Shown: positions 50,012-61,403, counted from the whole stretch's first letter. The stretch: 61,403 bases of DNA, filler included, from Sluysia triapertura (GCA_046118255.1; 5 parts of 5 records of this genome joined end to end with filler, not necessarily neighbours in it), one strand, 5' to 3'. A program made the numbers and translations. Notes: a model not told the origin generated them from the letters alone.

Positions 50012-51532
50012 GGTGACCTCTTTGCATTACCAAATAAATCCAACGGTTGGCCGTTAAGTCAGTAAGTCCAATACGTTGGTGGACTCACCTTTTTTAATTT
50101 TATTCTTCACGTAACATTATTTTACAATATGAATACAAGAATTAATATATTAAGATTTCTTTTAATATTCCAAATAAAAATTTAAATTTGATTTTAAATT
50201 CCAGCTTTAAACTAGTAGGAAAGCTTTAAGATTTTAAGTGATATTTTGATTTTTAACTTAACCTATAATATTAAAACTTTCGATCTTAGAATAAAGCAGG
50301 TATTTCTGATACGGAATCAGTAACCAGACACGTAATAATCAGATTGTGAAATAATTTCTGGAATTTAGTTAACGTCACTTAGCGTTCGGAGAATATTGAT
50401 CTTGTGCTATTGATTTCTCAGACATATAACATTTACCTGGATACGATAATTTTGATTTGTTAAAAGAAATTCGACGTTAATCTGTCAATTTAATTTTACC
50501 AGGATCTTATAATGCCAATATTAGAAACGATTATTGCACAGAACGTTAAATAACTAGTCAAAAAAGTTATTGTTTGACGCTATGAGACTACTTTTTAGTA
50601 AGTCATTTGTACATTTAAAATTTTATTGATCATTTTGCTGAGTTTTTCTTTAAAAAACTTTATCCTCAAAATAAGATGAACTTATAGAGGCATATCTACA
50701 AGAAAAACTTAAGAACGTAATTAAGATTTGATTAAATGTGTTTGTACTAAAATGTAATGCTTATGTATGAATCAATCAAGGGTTTTTAAATTTTATTATC
50801 AATAACTATCAAATGAAAAATTAGTAACTAATACAAATAAATGACAATCAACAATGCTAATGTTTATTAACAAAAATTATCTTAGATTAATATAATTCCA
50901 ATGTTTATAATAATATTATACAAAAATTTCACTTAAACTTTATCTGCAATATTAGAATATTATAGCCAGTCTTAAAAGCTTGATGAATTTCCGTGATATT
51001 TTATAGCTCCTCAAAATGAGAGGTTTCCTTAATAATAACAAACTTACGATCTAATTTCAAACTACTGATAAATATTTTCTCCAAATGCTTCGCTAATAGT
51101 CATATATAGATAATTGATCACACTTCTTATTTTATGGGGTAATTGCATATTCTCTTGTTACTATTTTACTAACTAATTGTTACACTTTGTGACTGAAAAT
51201 TGTATATCTCTTGTAGGTTAAACGAATTGTGCAAGTTTGTTAAAAATTTATACTTTTATATGATTTGGTATATAAAATATATATTAAATTAAATTTTTTA
51301 ATATATTTTAATAAAATTTTAGTATATATTAAATTAAAATTTTATATTACTATTTTAATGTATTTAATAACGAAATTTTATTATTTTCAAAAATTATTAA
51401 TAAATATCTAACTTTTTTATGAATAATTAAATTTTATTTTTTTAAAGTAACTTTAAAAATGCAATTGTTATTTTTAAAATTATTATTAAAGTTATAGGTT
51501 TGGATGATGCAAGAGTGTTCATTAACAAATCG

Positions 51533-51580
51533 TATTATCATTATTGTTATTATTATTATTGTTATTATTATTATTATTAC

Positions 51581-51617
<37 letters not shown>
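51533..51617. repeat. Imperfect (ATT)n microsatellite
   Basis: Directly visible; source of the poly-Ile ORF. Confidence 0.9.
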
Positions 51618-52205
51618 GTTCTGCTTTTACTAGTTCAAAACAATTATAATATTAATACGATATGGGTCCGCCTATGTAATACGATTTATCTTTCGAAAAG
51701 GACGTATCCGCAGGAATAATCAGTTCTACGAAAAGAAAACTTAACTCTTAATGCGTAATAATTAATAAGGGTCTTTTCTTGAATGATATCATAAAACTTT
51801 TATTCTCACAATTCCTTGTTGGGTGTTTTAGAATCAATGTAAAAGGAATTTAATTTACTCTATCAATCCTAGTTGCGGTTAACTTCTATTTTATGTTAAT
51901 TTCTTGATTTCGAATAGAACTTTCTTTAATTAGACACGTGTCTTTTTAACTAAGAATGACACAAAAGTCGTAATAATTTTTATTAATCAAATACTAAAAA
52001 TTCTTTAGACAAAATTTAAAATAATAATAAGTATATTTATGATTGTAATGCACAAATATAAAAATTAGCAAAAATGAATTTTAGTTAGGATTTTGATCCA
52101 GGCGAATGCTTGGATTTGTTAATAAATGCAAAAATTATTAGTGCATAGACCTTTATAAAACTAGCTTCCTATTATTCACTATAATTTATTTAATTCCAAT
52201 GATAG

Positions 52206-52290
52206 TAGCGTCCTAATGAATTTCAGATAGATATCTCCACAAAAGACAGCGTCCTGATAAACTCCAGATATATATCTTCCACTAAAAACA
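52206..52290. repeat. Two-copy ~42-bp tandem repeat
   Basis: AGCGTCCTAATGAATTTCAGATAGATATCTCCAC / AGCGTCCTGATAAACTCCAGATATATATCTTCCAC; lies in the putative 3' UTR/LTR of the gypsy element. Confidence 0.7.
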
Positions 52291-53789
52291 GAATGTGTAA
52301 GGAGGAATTCTTTGGAACTGCGTGAAGTTTATTGTAAAAATCGATATGTAACTTCCAAAATAGTGTGTGGAATTTCCAGAATCTAATCCTCACGATAAAG
52401 TATTGTTTTTTAGTAAATTATATTTGATCTAAGCATTCTTATCCTATTTATATGGAAGTCGAATAGACTATTTAGACTATTTGCATAAAATAACGAATTA
52501 CATAATAATGTTTCAATTACTAATGTTTTTACATAATACTAATTTTTATACATTATTAATATTTATACGATTCATTTGTGATATTTCTAATAACTTTACA
52601 ATATAAATTATTTCTTTATCGTTGTTACCAATTTATTTATTAATTACATAAACAATTTTTACGTAAACACATTTACAATATCTACAATATTTACAATATT
52701 TCCCCATCAGGGAAGATTCGTCTCGAATCATAGGAGTATTGTAAATGAAATAAAAGAATATATAAAACGTAAACACGACGAAAGTTGGTTATAAAGAGTA
52801 AGAATCACCAGAAATCATCAAAAATTGTCCAAGTCTACGTCCGAATCATCAGTCTAAGTCACCGGATCCACGGTACAAAAGCCGTATTCAGTCCGAATGG
52901 TACACGGGTCGGTCGAGGAGAGTCTGAAAATGATATAGGATGTTGTTATGACATTTTTGGTGGTGGCGAAGGCGATGGAGACATGTTTGATTGAAGCGCT
53001 GAAGGTGATGTCGATGTTGGCATGGTCAATGGTTTTTACTGTAGACGATGATGCTAATGGTACTGAATGATAAGCAGACGGTGCCACGAAAGTATTATCA
53101 GGAGTAGAATGAGTAGGAAAAAGTGAATGAGGAATAAAAGTTAGATCTTTCTCACGGATTAGGTCCAGCAAGGCAACTAACTCGAAAGACATCCGTGAGC
53201 ATGTCATTCGAGGAGGTATCGGATAAAGTAATCTAAAAGTCTGTCTGCCCCTTAAGATAGCATTATCCGTAGTATACGATAAGAGGTTGTTGTTGGATAA
53301 ATTAATAAGACCGAACCGAAAGGTAGGTTCAAGTCTCTGATAATAAGACGTGGGTTCAAAGACACCATGATCTTATCGTGAGGATGTCGTCTATATCTTT
53401 TGCCTCGGAAATGTCTGAATCTTTAATTTCCTGAATATCCCGCACGAAGTTTTTAATGCGTAGGCAAGGTATTATGTTTTATCTGTATGGTGTTGCTTGG
53501 AGTATGGAACGCAAGATATTTGAGTAACACGAGGGCGATCCATAAAATCATAAGCGTTTGAATACGCGATGAAAGTCAAGCGGTCCTCATCATAAGCAGA
53601 CATGGGTGAAATATGTCTGCCAGCGTGCTAAATTGGCAGTCTCATCCATATATATAGACTGGTGGATTCGACATATGCATTTGATACAAGGTCAATTCAT
53701 CACAAACTTGGAGAACTAATAGTTGTGGTATAATCATATTTGAACCTGGTGGTATTTTTATAAAACCATATTTACTGTGGATGACCATA

Positions 53790-54085
53790 TCTTCCAGTTT
53801 ATTGATAACATTCATATCCAATATTAGTTCATAGGGGCTGCTATCTCAAACATTTATTATGACTTGTACATATTGTCCTAATACTTCTATATAGCACAAT
53901 AAAGTTCCGTTGATATTTACGGTGTTTGATTAACATTATATATTACCGAACTGGTCTATTTAAGAACACTGATTCCCAGGTAGTTAGAAAGTTTTTATGA
54001 ACCACTGAAATAGTAGCGCCTGTATCTACGATTGCCTTAACCCATCGCCCATTGAAACGTACATTTTGCATTATATGAGCCAAAT
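53790..54085 (-). pseudogene. Second retropepsin-like aspartic protease, downstream of integrase
   Basis: VRFNGRWVKAIVDTGATISV (DTGA at 54015-54026), then NINGTLLCYIEVLG...PYELILDMNVI (decayed ILG motif); absent from the ORF track. Confidence 0.8.
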
Positions 54086-54229
54086 CATTTCCATGAGAAT
54101 GTATCATGTCTCACTTGTTTATGTCGTAGTGCATGAATTGAGGATGGTTTATCTTCATCCTTGTGTTTTGGCTGAATTTTCAATCTAGATTTTTGTACTT
54201 TTCTATTCCTTAAACTATATTCCTCTTTC

Positions 54230-55330
54230 GATGCCATCTTGCATCTATTGACTTGTACTACAAACGTTTCGGAATCAATTTTATTAGGATCATTAACAAA
54301 CACATTTTTGTTATTACATAAGGTCCTTTAAAAGGTTTATTTAACTTAGGTGATTGACCTGGTTTAGTTATTTGATAATCTATTAATACATCGTCAGCTA
54401 TTTTAAAATTGTGTTCTTTAGCTGTTTTATCGTAGGTATCCTTATATATTTGCTGTGAATATTTAATTTGAAGACCTGCTCGCTTCCATGCGTCCTGTAA
54501 TTGTTCCCTCATTGTAGTTACATATTCTGGAATCTCCAAGTAATTTGAAGTTGGAGGATCCCATTCTAAATCTACTGGCATATTAGAGTGTCTCCTGTAC
54601 ATTAAATAAAATGGCGTGAAATTAGTTGGTGGATGTACAGAACTTCTATATGCAAAAAGACATAGTGCTCTATATAAGTCCCAGTGAGTTTGTCTATCGT
54701 TTACATAAGATTGGATCATATTGATGAGAGTTCTATTAAAACGTTCCACTAATCTATCGGTTTGTGAATGGTAAGGCGATGTGTAAATTCGAAGTATATT
54801 AAAAATTTTTGCTACATCGCTAGTACAGTTAGTTCCTTGGTCTGTCAGTAATTTACGAGGCGTACCATATCTGTAGATAATTTTTTCTACCAATATTTGT
54901 GCCACAGTTTCGGCTTTTTGATTGGGCATCGGATAAACCTCTGGCCATTTAGCTAAATAATCCGCAAATACAATAATATTCTTATTACCGTTAATGGTCT
55001 CTGGAAGAGGACCCATAATATCCATAGCGGTAAATTCCATTGGTGATAATGGTACAGGCATGGGTTTTAGTGGTACCTTAGTCTTTTGTCCAGTATTTTT
55101 TCGTCAGCAACATATTAAACAATCCTTGCACCATTTTCTGATATCTGATTCCATATTTTCCCAATAGTATGTGTTTTTGATTCTCGACAATGTTTTTCTT
55201 GTTGATAGATGACCTCCTAATTCTCCGTCGTGAAACTCTATTAAAATAGGTATGATTAATGATTCTGGTATGATAGTTTTCCATTCATCTTTACTATTCT
55301 TAAATCTTAATATCCCATCCATAATAGCTA
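54230..55330 (-). pseudogene. Gypsy integrase (HHCC zinc finger, DDE core, GPY/F)
   Basis: FHDGELGGHLS...CKDCLIC; AMDIMGP, LTDQG, VERFNRTL; FKGPYVI; VQVNRCK; frameshifted. Confidence 0.95.
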
Positions 55331-55494
55331 ATCTTTTTGTTTGCAGTTTATTCAAGGTTCCCTTGGCCAAGGCATCTAAAATAGTCGAGATTTCTTTTTT
55401 TTCTCTCTGATGCTTAATAATCTCTTCACAGTTCTGCATCTTTCCCGATATTGTCATAATTTGTATCAAATTGATATATCACTTATCATCTACA

Positions 55495-55900
55495 TTTGTC
55501 AATCTAGACATACAGTCAGCCCCGTTATTTAGGCTACCTGGCTTATAAACAATTTCCAAATTAAATTCTGATAATTTATTAAACCACCTGTTGAGTCTAT
55601 TGACTTCGTCTCTGTGATTACACAAACATGTCAAAGGTTTGTGATCAGTATACAAATAAACTTTTGTCCTAGCAAATAATGTCTAAACAATTTACATACA
55701 TATACTATTGCTAGACATTCTTTCTCTACAGTCGAATAATTCATCTCTGCTTTGTTAAGTCTTCTACTGGCTTATGCTATGACTGTTCGAGATTATTTTT
55801 ATCTTTCTGACCTAAAATTGCGCAAATAGCATAATTACTGGCGTCCATAGTTAGTATGAAAAGTTTATTAACATCCGGCAATATTAATATTGGCGCTATG
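55495..55900 (-). pseudogene. Gypsy RNase H
   Basis: [63 protein letters not shown]. Confidence 0.93.
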
Positions 55901-56720
55901 GTTAGATGTTCCTTTAGTTCTTTGAATGCTTTTGTCTGCTTTTCAGTCCATTTAAATTCCACGCCATTTTTTGTTACCTTTCTAAGGGCTTGTGCAATTT
56001 TTGCAAAATTTCTAACAAACCTCTTATAACAATTAGCTAAACCTAGTAAACTCTGAACCTTTTTAACGTTGTCTGGTTGAGAGAACTTGATCACGTTTTC
56101 AATATTTCTCGGGTTTGGTTTAATACCATCTTTAGATACTCTATATGTCCTAAGAATTCGAGCTTTTCTTCTTCTCATACACATTTTATAGGTTTTATCT
56201 TAAGTCTGGCAACTTCTAACCTTTTCAGAATATTATCTATATCCTCTAAATGAGTTATAAAATCCTTTGAGAATATTATAATGTCATCTATATATACCAT
56301 GACATTCTTACATCCTGATACTACAAAATTCATGCAACGTTGAAAAGTTGCCGGTGTGCCAGTTAAACCAAAGGGCATTTTTTCTGCTATCTCTATCTGC
56401 CAATATCCACTTTGTAAATCTATAGTTGTAAAATATGTAACATTCCCTAATTTGTCTAACATCTCGTCTATTCGTGGTAGTGAGAATACATATTTTCGAG
56501 TAATCTTATTCAATTCTCTGAAATCTATACAGAATCGTATCGTGCCATCCTTCTTTTTAACGAGTAATACTGGTGATGAAAAAGGAAAGAAACTTGGTCT
56601 TATCACTCCAACCTTTTTCATAGTATCAATTTGATCTTGCATTTCTTTTTGATTACAAATAGGATTTCTGTAAGGTTTCCTTCGAATTACTTTATCCTCT
56701 GTTAGTGGTATTTCGTGTTT
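55900..56720 (-). pseudogene. Gypsy reverse transcriptase
   Basis: SSPVLLVKKKDGTIRFCIDFRELN, DLQSGYWQI, MPFGL..TPATFQR, VYIDDIIIFS; internal deletion and frameshifts. Confidence 0.96.
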
Positions 56721-57239
56721 TATAATTACAGAATCTCCAATATCATATTTGTTTTTTGAAATTGCTCTTGGATACTTATATATAACTTCGTATAGTTGTT
56801 CTTTTTGTTTTTTAGTTAGATTTTTGTTATTAATTTGAATTTCTCCGTAATCTTCTTCTGTGTGTCACGTTGTAATTTTATTGTATTAGTTTTCATATCT
56901 GTCACTGTGTTAATATGTGTTGGTATTTTATAATTAACAATTCTTCCCAATTTAGTGCCTGTAAATAACCATTTATTATCGTTATTATAATTTATAAGTC
57001 GAACGGGTATTTTTTTCTTCACAATTATTACATATTGAATCTGCAATACCTATATCCAGTTTCTGAATCTTTAAACATAATTGGGCCAGTTAATGAACTA
57101 TTTGTTTTTGCTGGGCATTATGTATTCGGTTCTACTTAATAACCACAATGGTTCGTCAACATAAACGTCATCATCGTCGATAGTTCTATTTGAATAACTG
57201 TCCATTCGTTTGACAATATCAAAATCTAGTATTACTCCT

Positions 57240-57480
57240 TTTAGTTGTGATAGTATATCCATTCCCAGTATCATGTCTTCTGGACATTTTTTTGACTCTC
57301 AATTTTACGTCAACTTTACTCTGTCCTATTTTGCACACAACCTTCATTACTCCAACAATGTGTATGGCATCTCCAGTTACTCCTGATAAATGTGAAAAAT
57401 GATTTGCAAGGTTTCCTTGTTCCTTTTCTGTCAATTGTTTTCATTAATTAATGATGTTACTGCTCCTGTATTATCATATA
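57240..57480 (-). pseudogene. Canonical (pre-RT) aspartic protease, decayed
   Basis: NTGAVTSLIN (57461-57472; D to N at the catalytic site), flap LSGVTGDAIHIVG, and EDMILGMDIL in a shifted frame. Confidence 0.8.
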
Positions 57481-57679
57481 TACTACATTTGGGGATTTGG
57501 ATAAAATTTATCTCTTTGAGTATCTTTTTGTATGTCATTTCGTGATCTTCTAAGATTTTCCTTTAATTCTTCAATTTCTTCATTTTCATCATTTTGAATT
57601 GTTTGCAATGCTACATTTTCATTTTCCGTTCTTGTTCTTTCATTTCTTAACACATTTATTTGTGAATTAGCATGGTGGT

Positions 57680-58926
57680 GTAACAAATACTTTGCGTTGT
57701 TACTGGTTCTAAATAAGTTTCTATTTTTCCATATATTATTGGTAATTCATTTAACTTCCACTTTTTTATACCTATAAGTGTGTAGTACTTCTTCCGTTAA
57801 TCTACAAATACGCCTTCTTCTAAGGGTAATAATTGTGCAACCAGATCGGGATTTGTTATGACTACTGCCAGTTTTGTACGTAGTATTTCTTTGTTCAGCC
57901 GGCAATCCCGAGCATTTATAATTTGATAAATTTTTTCTAAAGACATAAACACAAGATGATAGTAGAAGTCTGTCTTATTATTAAAATAACTATTTAATTT
58001 TATATTTTTTGAATCTATTCCTTCTTTGGCCTGTAATATTGTTTTTTCAGAAAGGTAAATACCTTGATATTTGGTTTCGATAATTTCATTTCCAAATCTT
58101 ATTATTGTTCCTTTTGATTTGAAAATTAATCCATCTTCTTTTTTACTGGCCATCATAATGGTAGGAGTTCCTATTTAATCTAATGTTTTACGTTGTAGTT
58201 GTTCCTTTTTGTTTATTTCTTCAATTGGTAGATCATCATTATTCTGGTAGACAAATCCGGATGCTAAATTTGTTTATTTGTTTAAAAATATTAAAGGACA
58301 CTGAAACTTATCCAATTCATATATTAGAGTGGTTTCACTTGTATCACAACTTGTTTGATCCATTTGGCAAAATGATCTAGACATCAATGTGTTTTTTTCA
58401 ATATCAAAACTTTCATTAAATGATTTCATACTTACTACAAAAGTTTCTTGAGCTACAACATTGTTATATTTTTTTTCCTTCATATTCTATAGATCCTTGT
58501 TCGCATGTTCCATCTGTCAGCACGTTTCCGGTAGTCCTAATATTATAAATAATTTTTTCATTATTTCTTACTCTTAATTTATCTCCTTCAACCAATCCTA
58601 TATATCCGGTCTCGAAAGCATCTCTACAATTATTCGGTAAAATCTTGAATGGTTTTAATACATGCGGTAACTCTATTATCGATGAATGACTATGGTGTCT
58701 ACAATATTGCCACTGATCTTTTTACCATACATTCTCTAACCAGTGCTGTTATCAAATTTCCTTCTTGGTAAACACTAAAGACTTTAGTTTCTTTTATCTG
58801 GATTCTAATGGGTCGAGATTCCGAGCAGTCTTCCGTATCTAGTAATGAGAACTTCTTGCCAACTTGTGGTTGATTACAATCAAAAGCTTTTATTGAACCA
58901 GATTTGTTTATATCAAACATAGCCAA
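57680..58926 (-). pseudogene. Envelope glycoprotein of chuvirus type (predicted class III/gB-like), C-terminally truncated
   Basis: Ordered motifs AFDC..FSLLDTEDC, ECMVKRS, YCRHHSHSS, CRDAFETG, GNVLTDGTC, NNVVAQ, YFNNK, DCRLNKEIL...NPD, EEVLHTY, NELPI match the motif order I recall for Chuviridae glycoproteins (GYDC..LSLLDVGEC, YCGMHSH, DGxC, NVVVQ, YxNSK, CxLERQxL, GEVxH, CYNELPV). Confidence 0.8.
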
Positions 58927-58931
58927 TATTA

Positions 58932-59400
58932 TTATCCTAATCGTGGTATAGCTGTATTTAACATATTATTGTTTCCGAATAAGTTTGTAAATAAATTTGA
59001 TGTTTCTTTGAGTTTTTGATTCTCTTTTCCTTTAATTATATCTCTCCATCCTCCTTGTTCTTCAATCCATAACTTTGTTTTCTTATTAACAAATGCTATA
59101 ACCTTATTTACTTTATTCTTATCAATTATCCTTTCCTTATTACATTGAAACACGGTGTAAGCTAAAATTATTTTAAATCTTTCTCTATTTATCTCCTTAC
59201 TAAGTTTTTTTATTAAATATTGATTTACACTGTCCATTCTCTATAAAATTACCAACTTCTTTGTCCTTATATTTCTCCTCTAATTGTTTTATAAGTTTTA
59301 TTATTGTACTCTTATAGTCCTTTATTTTGGGTAATAATTTCTTATATTTACTGAAGTGTGTAAACGTATTAGATAGAAACGCATAGACTACATTTTTTGT
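58932..59400 (-). pseudogene. Bcl-2-like domain
   Basis: BH2 WIEEQGGW (59046-59069) preceded at Bcl-2-like spacing by a decayed BH1, EINRERFKIILAY (consensus NWGRIVALFxF); upstream helices frameshifted. Confidence 0.7.
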
Positions 59401-59679
59401 ATCTAATTCTAAAATTTCTTCTTCATTTTCGTCTATTATTTAATTGTCAAATCTATAACGTTTTTTCGAACAGTATATCTTCTTCATTTTTTAATTGTAT
59501 TTGTTTCCTTGTGGCTGGTTTCAATGTGTGGATTTTTGTTAAGATCCACTATATAATCAGGTTCTTCTATTGTGTCATTATTTTTAGTTATTTCATTATC
59601 ATTTTCATCCATTAATTGTCTTAAGAATGACTGATATATTTTCGAATAAGGTTTCATATTGGGTAGTCTTGTTGGTAGT

Positions 59680-59900
59680 AACAGCTTTTATTAGTTTCTC
59701 TTGGTTCCCTAATGGGTAACCATAATTGTTAAGAATGTCTGTAGGAATTAAATATCTGTTATCATAGAATAAGTCCACGTTCGAAATTGATGGATCATTC
59801 GATTTTATTATGTTAATAATGTCTTGAACCAAAGAATTTACTGATAATTCCATAAAAATATTGATAAGTCCATTTAATGATATATTAATTTTCATTAACA
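59680..59900 (-). pseudogene. Ubiquitin-like domain
   Basis: MKINISLNGLINIFMELSVNSLVQDIINIIKS..VDLFYDNRYLIPTDILNNYG follows the ubiquitin beta-grasp pattern (MQIFV..ITLEV...TIENVK..I...LIFAGKQLEDGRTLSDYN). Confidence 0.6.
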
Positions 59901-60392
59901 TACGTGGATCAGTTTTTCTTTCCATTAATGCAATCTTTTTAAATATCTTTCTTGCTTTATATTGATGAGGGTTGCTGGATTCACTTAATATAATCAAGCT
60001 TGGTTTGATACTCTGTGCATTAAACATATTTTTAAACATCTAAATTCAAAATTTTATCCAAATTTTTATCTATAAAAGTCATCATTTTCTAATTCAGTAA
60101 GAAATGCCTTTATCTCTTCAATCAATGATGGTTCTGGAGTATCCATTTTTCTTTGGTTATCCAAGTCAACTATTTGTTCTTCCTCTTCATTACCTAATAT
60201 AATTATTGAATCTAAATCTTCAATTATATCATCGACTAGGTCATCTTCATTAATTGACTCATCTGTTTGGGTGGTTAATTCTTCTTCGTTTATTGTGTTA
60301 TTATCTTTTCCCATCTTCTAATAATTGCATCGACCTTCTTATTTTCTTCTTCTATCTCTTCCGTAGTTATTTTCTGTTGTTTTTTACTACTC

Positions 60393-61000
60393 TCAACGTT
60401 TTCTTTTTATCTTCATACTCCTTTTACGAAAGAAGTAATTGATGAACGTTTCATCCTCGTCTTCTTGTTCTATCTTTCTCCTTTCTTCGTTTATATCCAT
60501 ACAATCTAGTTTTGCTCTACGAAACTCACGTAACATTTCTTCTTCTTCATATGTTAGTCTTATTGGATATTTTTCTAAACCAAAGTCTTCATAATCTTCA
60601 TCATAATTACAATTTATCTGTCGCTTGTCTTCAAACTTTACTTTTATTGGACAACGTTGTCTGTTTTTATTGAGATTTTGTTTGAAGGTTTCGGATTTCA
60701 ACTTGTTGAAATTGCAGGCATAGTGTCCTGGTTTGTTACAGTTATGGCATATTATTTCTCCTTCGGTATTAGTTCTTGTTTTGTAATTATTATAATTTGA
60801 TCGGAAAGAACTTTTACTTCTATCGAAATTATTTCTTTGTCCATCATTACTTGGCCATCTGGGAGAGGGTCGTTGCTTGTCATCTTTAGAACCATTGTTC
60901 GAATAATTTTTGGCAAATCCCTTTGTGGCCCTTCTTGAATTTTGATAGTTTATCTCTGAATTCTGATTATCTCTTTCTGTTCCTGAATTATGAAAATTAT
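60393..61000 (-). pseudogene. Gag C-terminus with nucleocapsid zinc knuckle, followed by an acidic/charged region
   Basis: N/R/S-rich linker then RTNTEGEIICHNCNKPGHYACNF (CX2CX4HX4C with the last Cys lost, 60708-60749), in frame with ORF 60393-60701. Confidence 0.8.
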
Positions 61001-61403
61001 TTATTTACTTTATTTTAATTTTTACTTAAAATAATAAAATAAAAAAGATTACCACATGCATGGACCTTATGTTCATTGCGGGTAATATTGTGTGATTGTA
61101 CCACTATGTTGTAAAATTTTTAAATTTTTCATTTTATACTCTTTCATAATCCCAAGTCTCACAATCAAATACTCTCTCACACAAATCATCAAAACTTCTT
61201 TGAGAATTAAACCGGTAATAACAACTTTGACAATTACATGGTACGGTCAGTCAAACATCGTTATGTACAAAACACACGAATATGATTTATTATCAACCAT
61301 AATTTTCTTTTCTTTAATCAATCTATTTGTTGGGATTAGTAAAGAATAAGGGTTGATAGAAGGGTCAAAACTTAGGACTGCAGTGTCAGTGGAACATTAT
61401 TAA

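What the first reader, a model, noticed from the sequence alone, without database searches (positions are those of the whole stretch)
52690..61000. Gypsy retroelement with a virus-like accessory cassette (UBL + Bcl-2 + chuvirus-type Env) between gag and pol, plus a second protease
Seen: one strand, one collinear run: Gag knuckle - charged region - UBL - Bcl-2-like - glycoprotein - coiled region - PR - RT - RH - IN - PR2 - unknown. The run is broken only by frameshifts, stops and deletions, and I saw no internal LTRs or TSDs. Established: env of retroviruses and errantiviruses lies 3' of pol; Bcl-2 mimics are typical of large DNA viruses. Inference: the ancestor was an enveloped, possibly infectious Metaviridae element with one giant polyprotein coupling cell entry, apoptosis suppression and ubiquitin-like processing. 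Giant single-ORF Burro elements with extra domains are known from the planarian Schmidtea mediterranea (from memory), so novelty must be tested against them.
Basis: partly seen in the sequence, partly recalled or inferred. Interest (0 to 1): 0.93.

Follow-up and report, generated by a model that had tools for sequence, protein, structure and literature searches.

The report
Decayed Burro-like env-carrying gypsy retroelement
This is a dead, truncated copy of a Ty3/gypsy retroelement with a viral fusion glycoprotein and a probable Bcl-2-like module between gag and pol; that layout is real but already published for planarian Burro elements, so the copy is ordinary.

Summary
The collinear run is real and lies on the minus strand, about 61004 down to 53946. 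Confirmed by profile: Monjiviricetes-type fusion glycoprotein (N-terminal two-thirds), RT, RNase H, integrase, and a second retropepsin domain after integrase. A partial CCHC knuckle and the first protease are supported more weakly. The Bcl-2-like module is probable, from four weak but concordant tests. The ubiquitin-like domain is not confirmed. The "unknown" tail (52750-53945) differs in composition, has no relatives, and may not belong to the element.

Intact relatives carry the same order, (gag/CCHC)-Env-PR(s)-RT-RH-IN, in one open reading frame of 2,100-4,844 residues. This excludes a nested insertion or misassembly.

Novelty fails. Arkhipova and Yushenova 2019 describe Burro as Gag/CCHC, Ubi2/SUMO-like, BCL2, mononegavirus-like Env in frame between gag and pol, then PR-RT-RH-IN. 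GAG-ENV-POL elements are also reported in flatworms, bryozoans and nematodes.

This copy has roughly 20 stops and at least 9 frame changes. It has lost the Env membrane anchor, the gag capsid part and most of the second protease.

The one feature I found undescribed is arrays of up to seven protease domains in relatives, including a conserved post-integrase one.

The parts
61005..61403 (-). Degenerate AT-rich stretch where the gag capsid part would be expected. No capsid homology was found, and the piece's edge cuts it.
   Evidence: 12 stops in 133 codons of the gag frame. No tblastn match from the N-termini of relatives.
60396..61004 (-). gag C-terminal remnant: a basic region, a partial CCHC zinc knuckle and a charged tail
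   Evidence: zf-CCHC E 0.0037, profile positions 2-13 of 18, below cut-off. Aligns to P0007 residues 231-291, which hold that protein's CCHC, E 0.001.
60069..60317 (-). Acidic linker region in the same frame as the gag remnant
   Evidence: Translation. No family hit above noise.
59608..60039 (-). Probably coding; the fold is unconfirmed.
   Evidence: An open stretch this long arose in 1.3% of resamples. No Pfam, PDB or homologue hit. AF2 pLDDT 51, and the fold search gave no ubiquitin-like match.
58935..59439 (-). Bcl-2-like module, broken. The supported part is the C-terminal BH1-BH2 half, directly upstream of Env.
   Evidence: Pfam Bcl-2 E 0.017. The same weak hit occurs at the same relative position in P0003 (E 9.6e-4) and P0004 (E 0.2). 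A four-member profile against PDB: all 60 matches shown are Bcl-xL/Bcl-2, best E 0.003. Foldseek: all 34 matches are Bcl-2 family, none significant.
57698..58965 (-). Env: N-terminal two-thirds of a Monjiviricetes-type fusion glycoprotein, broken. The C-terminal third and the membrane anchor are missing.
   Evidence: PF24664 pieces cover profile 6-368. tblastn is collinear with P0005 137-564, P0009 377-801 and P0037 195-627. Relatives have a membrane anchor about 565 residues after the leader.
57486..57697 (-). Charged 'coiled' stretch, possibly a remnant of the Env cytoplasmic tail
   Evidence: Weak but positionally collinear matches to post-anchor Env tails of P0035, P0001 and P0033, E 0.2-3.
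57101..57538 (-). First (RT-proximal) retropepsin, broken. Only its middle and C-terminal parts are detected.
   Evidence: Family PR profile positions 32-77 (E 6e-5) and 86-95 (E 0.016). tblastn to P0009 1161-1281. No Pfam hit.
55482..56864 (-). Reverse transcriptase and RNase H, broken
   Evidence: RVT_1 E 1e-21, RT_RNaseH_2 E 4e-15, RT_RNaseH E 2e-9. Ty3 RT 4ol8 E 2e-35. 46-49% identity to P0005, P0009 and P0037.
54120..55478 (-). Integrase (zinc-binding, catalytic core, C-terminal region), broken by stops only
   Evidence: Integrase_H2C2 E 6e-19, rve E 3.5e-7. PDB foamy-virus and Ty3 integrases, E 1e-10 to 2e-8.
53946..54107 (-). Second, post-integrase retropepsin. Only its first third, with the catalytic signature, is retained.
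   Evidence: gag-asp_proteas E 1e-5, RVP above cut-off. Family profile E 1.5e-9. Positionally equivalent to complete post-IN PR domains of P0005 (2304-2400) and P0037 (3342-3440).
52750..53945 (-). Unassigned tail. Most of it is a GC-richer block (39-45% GC, opposite GC skew) with a 172-codon open stretch. It is not shown to belong to the element.
   Evidence: Composition. No Pfam, PDB or homologue hit. No match to the post-PR tails of relatives.
50012..52749 (.). AT-rich flank (16-28% GC) with microsatellite and short tandem repeats. No gene was recognised.

Best explanation
The window holds a dead copy of a Burro-like Ty3/gypsy (Metaviridae) retroelement of the GAG-ENV-POL type. It is truncated at both ends and internally deleted.

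Shown in intact relatives:
- One giant polyprotein carries (gag/CCHC), in some lineages a Bcl-2-like module, and a Monjiviricetes-type fusion glycoprotein.
- One to five retropepsin domains follow, then RT-RNase H-integrase.
- In the lineage closest to this copy, a further retropepsin domain follows integrase.

Inferred mechanism:
- The hydrophobic leader at the start of Env and the membrane anchor about 565 residues later would thread the Env ectodomain into the ER lumen.
- Gag and the Bcl-2-like part on one side, and PR-RT-IN on the other, would stay cytosolic. This resembles the topology of flavivirus polyproteins.
- Host signal peptidase and the element's own proteases would then release the parts.
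- The Bcl-2-like module would delay death of the producing cell.
- Several protease domains in one chain could pair within the chain and make activation independent of polyprotein dimerisation.

This copy can do none of that. Every gene is broken, Env lacks its anchor, the gag capsid part is missing and the second protease is cut short.
For: The window is collinear with single-ORF relatives from independent contigs, from the Env start through integrase into the post-IN protease: P0005 (2855 aa), P0009 (2627 aa) and P0037 (4844 aa), at 43-49% identity in pol.

Env leader and anchor segments occur in 7 and 12 of 12 relatives respectively. The Bcl-2-like signal recurs at the same position in four members.

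The post-IN PRs of P0005 and P0037 are reciprocal best matches (38%), and so are the RT-proximal PRs (49%).

Published Burro and GAG-ENV-POL descriptions match the order.
Against: - No LTRs, TSD, PBS or PPT were found in the piece, so the element's ends are not defined.
- The gag capsid domain was not detected.
- The Bcl-2 evidence is below every formal threshold: Pfam 16 bits against 31.4, PDB profile E 0.003, Foldseek E at least 2 on a pLDDT-55 model.
- The ubiquitin-like domain is unconfirmed.
- Burro's dUTPase, MATH, BIR and ankyrin domains are absent here.
- No Burro reference sequence could be compared, and the host is unknown.
- The membrane topology, processing and anti-apoptotic role are inference only.
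Confidence: 0.85

Rival explanations
1. It is a deleted derivative of one of the catalogued giant Burro elements (Burro1-4 / GYPSM1) of a dugesiid planarian. In that case nothing about it, including its family, is new.
For: The module order matches the published Burro order: knuckle, candidate UBL position, Bcl-2-like, Env, PR, RT-RH-IN. The genome context is AT-rich. Burro copies number in the thousands and decayed fragments are reported. A 4844-residue relative with an ankyrin repeat exists.
Against: No dUTPase lies between PR and RT, although the window is collinear there with relatives that also lack it. No MATH, BIR, ankyrin or Smc signal appears in the window. No near-identical protein exists in the libraries searched; the best is 48% identity. 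Burro references were not available for comparison.
Confidence: 0.3
2. It is a chimera. Either an endogenous RNA-virus glycoprotein fragment (with a host Bcl-2 fragment) and an unrelated gypsy element happen to lie side by side, or they were joined by misassembly.
For: No LTRs delimit the element. There is a large discontinuity between Env and the first protease relative to intact relatives.
Against: At least six relatives from independent contigs carry Env, PR, RT, RH and IN in one uninterrupted ORF in the same order. Three carry the Bcl-2-like segment directly fused to Env. The window's pieces are collinear with them on one strand.
Confidence: 0.03
3. The Env or the Bcl-2-like segment is a host-domesticated gene still in use.
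For: Env and Bcl-2 captures by hosts are known in general (established knowledge).
Against: Env has 3-4 in-frame stops, 2 frame changes and no membrane anchor. The Bcl-2-like part is separated from its neighbours by frame changes, and its N-terminal half is not recognisable.
Confidence: 0.01

Closest known systems
Burro / GYPSM1 giant gypsy-like LTR retrotransposons of planarians (Grohme et al. 2018; Jurka 2007; annotated in Arkhipova and Yushenova 2019, PMC6431247)
   Same: - Ty3/gypsy pol.
- Gag with CCHC knuckles.
- A BCL2-like motif directly upstream of an Env that hits mononegavirus-type fusion glycoproteins.
- Env in frame between gag and pol, followed by PR-RT-RH-IN.
   Different: - This copy retains about 7 kb, against an internal region of up to 25 kb.
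- No dUTPase, MATH_TRAF_C, BIR, ankyrin, Smc or AIR1 signal.
- The UBL is not detectable.
- A post-integrase protease is present, which the review does not mention.
- Sequence-level kinship with Burro could not be tested.
GAG-ENV-POL 'errantivirus-like' Ty3/gypsy elements of Platyhelminthes, Bryozoa and Nematoda (Chary and Hayashi 2026, PMC13524379; Sacco et al. 2022, as cited there)
   Same: An envelope gene of RNA-virus/class III type lies between gag and pol of a Ty3/gypsy element in non-insect invertebrates.
   Different: - Those Envs are described as HSV gB-type. Here the profile hit is Monjiviricetes_fusion, with only faint gB and bornavirus-G side hits in relatives.
- Bcl-2-like and multiple protease domains are not mentioned there.
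Mosquito BEL/Pao elements with captured Chuviridae-like glycoproteins (Dezordi et al. 2020, PMC7642597)
   Same: An LTR retrotransposon captured a glycoprotein of the same broad virus class.
   Different: That case involves a different retroelement superfamily (BEL/Pao, not Ty3/gypsy) and a different host phylum. I did not check the Env position in that paper.
Insect errantiviruses (gypsy, ZAM, Idefix)
   Same: They are env-carrying Ty3/gypsy elements.
   Different: Their env lies 3' of pol as a separate ORF and is of the baculovirus F type (established knowledge; PMC13524379).

Membership tests
Ty3/gypsy (Metaviridae) LTR retrotransposon | Domain order PR-RT-RNase H-IN, with gypsy-type RNase H and an H2C2 integrase | tested here: met
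   Pfam hits in that order on one strand. Collinear with intact relatives.
Ty3/gypsy (Metaviridae) LTR retrotransposon | RT closest to Ty3/gypsy RTs | tested here: met
   Best PDB matches are Ty3 RT 4ol8 (E 2e-35) and Ty3 Gag-Pol 7q5b (E 4e-34). The next best is a caulimovirus at E 7e-17. No formal phylogeny was made.
Ty3/gypsy (Metaviridae) LTR retrotransposon | Flanking LTRs with a target-site duplication | tested here: inconclusive
   No direct repeat pair of at least 25 nt of LTR type in 50012-61403. The 5' end runs into the piece's edge, and the 3' end is not recognisable.
Burro (Burro1-4 / GYPSM1) | Env in frame between gag and pol | tested here: met
   The order is met in the window (broken), and in one ORF in relatives.
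Burro (Burro1-4 / GYPSM1) | BCL2-like motif directly upstream of Env | tested here: inconclusive
   The signals are concordant but sub-threshold.
Burro (Burro1-4 / GYPSM1) | Ubi2/SUMO-like (PF11976) upstream of BCL2 | tested here: not met
   No Pfam hit at E up to 1, no PDB hit, no homologue, and no beta-grasp in the (poor) model.
Burro (Burro1-4 / GYPSM1) | dUTPase between PR and RT; MATH_TRAF_C, BIR, ankyrin, Smc, AIR1 motifs | tested here: not met
   None found in any minus-strand open piece. Only relative P0037 has an ankyrin hit.
Burro (Burro1-4 / GYPSM1) | Giant size (internal region up to 25 kb, ORF1 about 4,900 aa) | tested here: not met
   About 7 kb of recognisable element remains (53946-61004). 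The copy is truncated and deleted, so this does not exclude a giant parent. Relative P0037 has 4,844 aa.
Burro (Burro1-4 / GYPSM1) | Sequence similarity to the deposited Burro records; dugesiid planarian host | not testable with these tools
   No Burro reference or planarian genome is available in the collections.
Monjiviricetes fusion glycoprotein (PF24664) | Profile match above the curated threshold | tested here: met
   36.9 and 30.7 bits against a cut-off of 27 for two pieces, plus two collinear weaker pieces. Relatives score E 1e-63 to 1e-95.
Monjiviricetes fusion glycoprotein (PF24664) | Complete ectodomain with a membrane anchor | tested here: not met
   The window covers only about the first two-thirds. 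The anchor seen in all 12 relatives is absent.
   This would need a comparison with animal-virus glycoproteins, which I was not to fetch. Only the class-level family is shown.
Bcl-2 family | Pfam PF00452 above the gathering score | tested here: not met
   Window 16.1 bits, P0003 20.1 bits, P0004 12.7 bits, against a cut-off of 31.4.
Bcl-2 family | Bcl-2 helical fold | tested here: inconclusive
   The model is all-helical at pLDDT 55. All 34 Foldseek matches are Bcl-2 family, but best E is 2.1 and TM 0.49. By contrast, the equally poor UBL model gave an unrelated assortment of hits.
Ubiquitin-like (beta-grasp) domains | Sequence-profile or fold match | tested here: not met

The most novel reading that the evidence does not exclude
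The lineage to which this copy belongs may carry an undescribed feature: arrays of two to seven diverged retropepsin domains in one polyprotein, each still matching the domain profile over nearly its full length. One of these sits at a conserved position after integrase, and this window keeps a stump of it. In a sub-lineage, a Bcl-2-like module is fused directly to the Env leader. If real and undescribed, this would be a new way for a giant retroelement polyprotein to organise its own processing.
Probability: 0.3. Interest if true: 0.5.

Novelty: new member of a known kind. Interest (0 to 1): 0.28.

Why it matters
The finding matters little as a discovery, because the Ubi/SUMO-BCL2-Env block between gag and pol is already published for Burro and this copy is dead.

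It has some value as a data point:
- Env-between-gag-and-pol gypsy elements with a Bcl-2-like module form a diverse family. There were 33 clusters at 50% identity, and the nearest is only 48% identical to this copy.
- Members occur mostly in unannotated environmental contigs.
- The family carries multiple protease domains, including one after integrase.

That could guide annotation of such elements, which are easily mistaken for separate viral fossils plus a gypsy element, or even for bacterial genes, as one relative was.

Tried and rejected
**Ubiquitin-like domain.** Pfam at E up to 1, a PDB sequence search, BLAST against 36 relatives, a homologue search (no hit), a single-sequence AF2 model (pLDDT 51) and Foldseek (unrelated hits). 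Nothing supports it.

**More Bcl-2-region homologues.** A search with the region upstream of Env in P0029 found only P0029 itself.

**Tail 52750-53945.** Pfam, PDB, a homologue search and a comparison with the post-PR tails of relatives all found nothing. Those tails are not conserved among relatives either.

**LTRs, TSD, tRNA and RNA families.** None found.

**Host identification.** The relatives are unnamed ENA/JGI contig proteins, plus one labelled as a Flavobacteriaceae MAG. The host remains unknown.

**gag capsid domain.** Not found with the N-termini of relatives.

**Nested insertion or misassembly.** Rejected because of the single-ORF relatives.

**Literature.** The primary Burro paper was not held by DOI, and one literature hit was only 'Burrows-Wheeler'.

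2. I also used short motif patterns from memory as regular expressions: BH1/BH2-like, and the retropepsin catalytic signature. These are leads only; the domain calls rest on profiles.
3. My scripts and notes printed ranges of open stretches and alignment-segment bounds for use as query references (notes 1-3). Some of those bounds coincide with breaks. I compiled no list of breaks and no changes.
4. In the sandbox I built a profile HMM of the natural 95-residue protease domains of relatives, for searching and aligning only.

Full report
**1. Observation**

The piece 50012-61403 codes on its minus strand. Within the finding's range, that strand has nine open stretches of at least 100 codons, where Markov resamples give 0.17. 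The plus strand has none.

Stop-free pieces, searched separately, gave the following in order along the minus strand:
- A basic stretch with a partial CCHC knuckle: zf-CCHC E 0.0037, below cut-off. It aligns to the knuckle region of relative P0007, E 0.001.
- An acidic stretch.
- A 144-codon open stretch with no hit at all.
- A piece with a weak Bcl-2 hit at the BH2 end of the profile, E 0.017.
- Four collinear pieces of the Monjiviricetes fusion glycoprotein family covering profile positions 6-368 of 653, two above the curated cut-off.
- A charged stretch.
- A protease seen only with a family-specific profile.
- RVT_1, E 1e-21; gypsy-type RNase H; Integrase_H2C2, E 6e-19; rve.
- After integrase, the first third of a second retropepsin: RVP above cut-off and E 1.5e-9 against the family profile.

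There is no LTR pair, tRNA gene or Rfam family in the piece.

**2. One element, not a chimera**

A full-library search with the best Env piece found 33 clusters. The nearest is 48% identical. Many hits are very long single proteins, and Pfam shows a shared layout in them:
- gag (Retrotrans_gag and/or zf-CCHC) where the N-terminus is present;
- a complete Monjiviricetes_fusion domain, E 1e-63 to 1e-95;
- one or more retropepsins;
- RT, RNase H and integrase.

One cluster member, P0037, has 4,844 residues, which is about the size reported for Burro ORF1. It adds an ankyrin repeat and a C2H2 finger.

The window is collinear with P0005, P0009 and P0037 from the first residues of Env through integrase and into a post-integrase protease. 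Identity is 43-49% in pol. These relatives come from independent contigs. A nested insertion or an assembly join in this window is therefore very unlikely.

**3. The cassette**

*Env.* In relatives, a hydrophobic segment sits at the Env N-terminus (7 of 12), and a second follows about 565 residues later (12 of 12). These are a leader and a membrane anchor. The window copy stops matching at about two-thirds of the ectodomain. It resumes in the protease, so the anchor is gone. The charged 'coiled' stretch weakly resembles post-anchor Env tails.

*Bcl-2-like.* Each test is sub-threshold, but they agree:
- Pfam Bcl-2 is the hit for the window piece (E 0.017), for P0003 (E 9.6e-4) and for P0004 (E 0.2). 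In each it lies at the same place, directly upstream of Env.
- A profile of the four members that share this segment retrieves from the PDB only Bcl-xL/Bcl-2 chains among the 60 matches shown. The best E is 0.003, over about 70 residues spanning BH1 to BH2.
- P0003 alone does the same.
- A low-confidence model (pLDDT 55) is all-helical. All 34 of its Foldseek matches are Bcl-2, Bcl-xL, Mcl-1, Bax or Bak, with none significant.
- As a control, the equally poor model of the 144-codon piece gave an unrelated mixture of hits.

I take the module as probably Bcl-2-like. Only a sub-lineage has it: the window, P0003, P0004 and P0029.

*Ubiquitin-like.* Nothing I could run supports it. The only argument is position. 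Burro is reported to have a Ubi2/SUMO-like motif just upstream of BCL2.

**4. The second protease**

A profile built from natural protease domains of relatives finds one to seven such domains per polyprotein:
- P0037 has five between Env and RT and two after integrase.
- P0007 has four.
- P0005 has two before RT and one after integrase.

The post-integrase domains of P0005 and P0037 are each other's best match (38%). The RT-proximal ones are likewise (49%). Copies within one protein are only 25-46% identical. These are therefore old domains held in position, not recent duplications.

The window's second protease aligns in register with the post-integrase domains of P0005 and P0037. It is cut off after about a third of the domain.

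A text search found no paper using phrases for tandem, duplicated or multiple protease domains in LTR retrotransposons. That is not proof of absence.

**5. The tail**

Homology with all relatives ends inside the second protease. Downstream lies a block of about 1 kb (roughly 52750-53750) with 39-45% GC and a GC skew opposite to the rest of the element. It contains a 172-codon open stretch on the same strand. That stretch has no Pfam, PDB or database relative and no counterpart in the tails of relatives. I cannot say whether it is part of the element, an LTR remnant or foreign sequence.

**6. State of decay (counts only)**

| Region | In-frame stops | Frame changes | Other loss |
|---|---|---|---|
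| gag remnant and acidic linker | 5 | n/a | capsid part not found; knuckle partial |
| Candidate UBL to Bcl-2-like | several | at least 3 | n/a |
| Env | 3-4 | 2 | one large deletion removing the C-terminal third and anchor |
| Protease region | 3 | 1 | N-terminal part lost |
| RT-RNase H | 2 | 3 | n/a |
| Integrase | 2-6 (depends on guide) | 0 | n/a |
| Second protease | n/a | n/a | truncated |

**7. Comparison with what is known**

Arkhipova and Yushenova (2019, PMC6431247) annotate planarian Burro/GYPSM1 as follows:
- Gag with two or three CCHC knuckles.
- MATH_TRAF_C, then Ubi2/SUMO-like, then BCL2.
- An Env that hits mononegavirus fusion glycoproteins. [quoted passage not shown]
- PR, dUTPase, RT, RH and IN, plus BIR, ankyrin and others.

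Chary and Hayashi (2026, PMC13524379) report GAG-ENV-POL Ty3/gypsy elements in Platyhelminthes, Bryozoa and Nematoda. They cite Sacco et al. 2022 for nematodes.

This copy differs from published Burro in four ways:
- It is far smaller.
- It has no dUTPase.
- It has none of the other accessory motifs.
- It has a post-integrase protease.

Whether it is a deleted Burro or a compact sister lineage cannot be decided here. No Burro reference could be compared, and the host is unknown.

BURRO1 is described as abundant, active and piRNA-controlled in Schmidtea (PMC8532177). This shows that the kind is biologically live even though this copy is not.

**8. Mechanism**

The shown and inferred steps are set out under the best explanation. 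The domain order, the Env leader and anchor, and the conserved protease positions are shown in relatives. The membrane topology, the processing and the anti-apoptotic role are inferred from established knowledge of polyprotein viruses, retropepsin dimerisation and Bcl-2 proteins.

**10. Verdict**

The ubiquitin-like call and the tail are unsupported, and the architecture is already known. Interest is 0.28.

Noticed in passing
Relatives P0037, P0007, P0005, P0004, P0035, P0022 (proteins; no window coordinates); stump at window 53946-54107: Single polyproteins carry arrays of two to seven diverged retropepsin domains, including one or two after integrase. Positions are conserved between elements. 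I found no paper describing this.
   Followed up: partly
Relative P0009 = HBK71150.1: A 2,627-residue Env-PR-RT-RH-IN gypsy polyprotein is deposited as a hypothetical protein of a 'Flavobacteriaceae bacterium' MAG. It is most likely a eukaryotic contaminant contig in a bacterial bin.
   Followed up: no
window 52750-53750: A GC-richer block (39-45% GC, GC skew opposite to the element) holds a 172-codon open stretch on the minus strand. No relative was found anywhere I searched.
   Followed up: partly
window 51533-51616, 52207-52291, 52671-52701: The very AT-rich flank holds a (TAT)n microsatellite of 28 units, a 41-bp unit repeated twice and a 9-bp unit repeated 3.4 times.
   Followed up: no
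Relatives P0005, P0007, P0008, P0009, P0030, P0033, P0035: The segment between gag and Env is not homologous across the family. Only four members share the Bcl-2-like piece, and others carry unrelated sequence there, so the slot upstream of Env looks like a swap site for accessory modules.
   Followed up: partly
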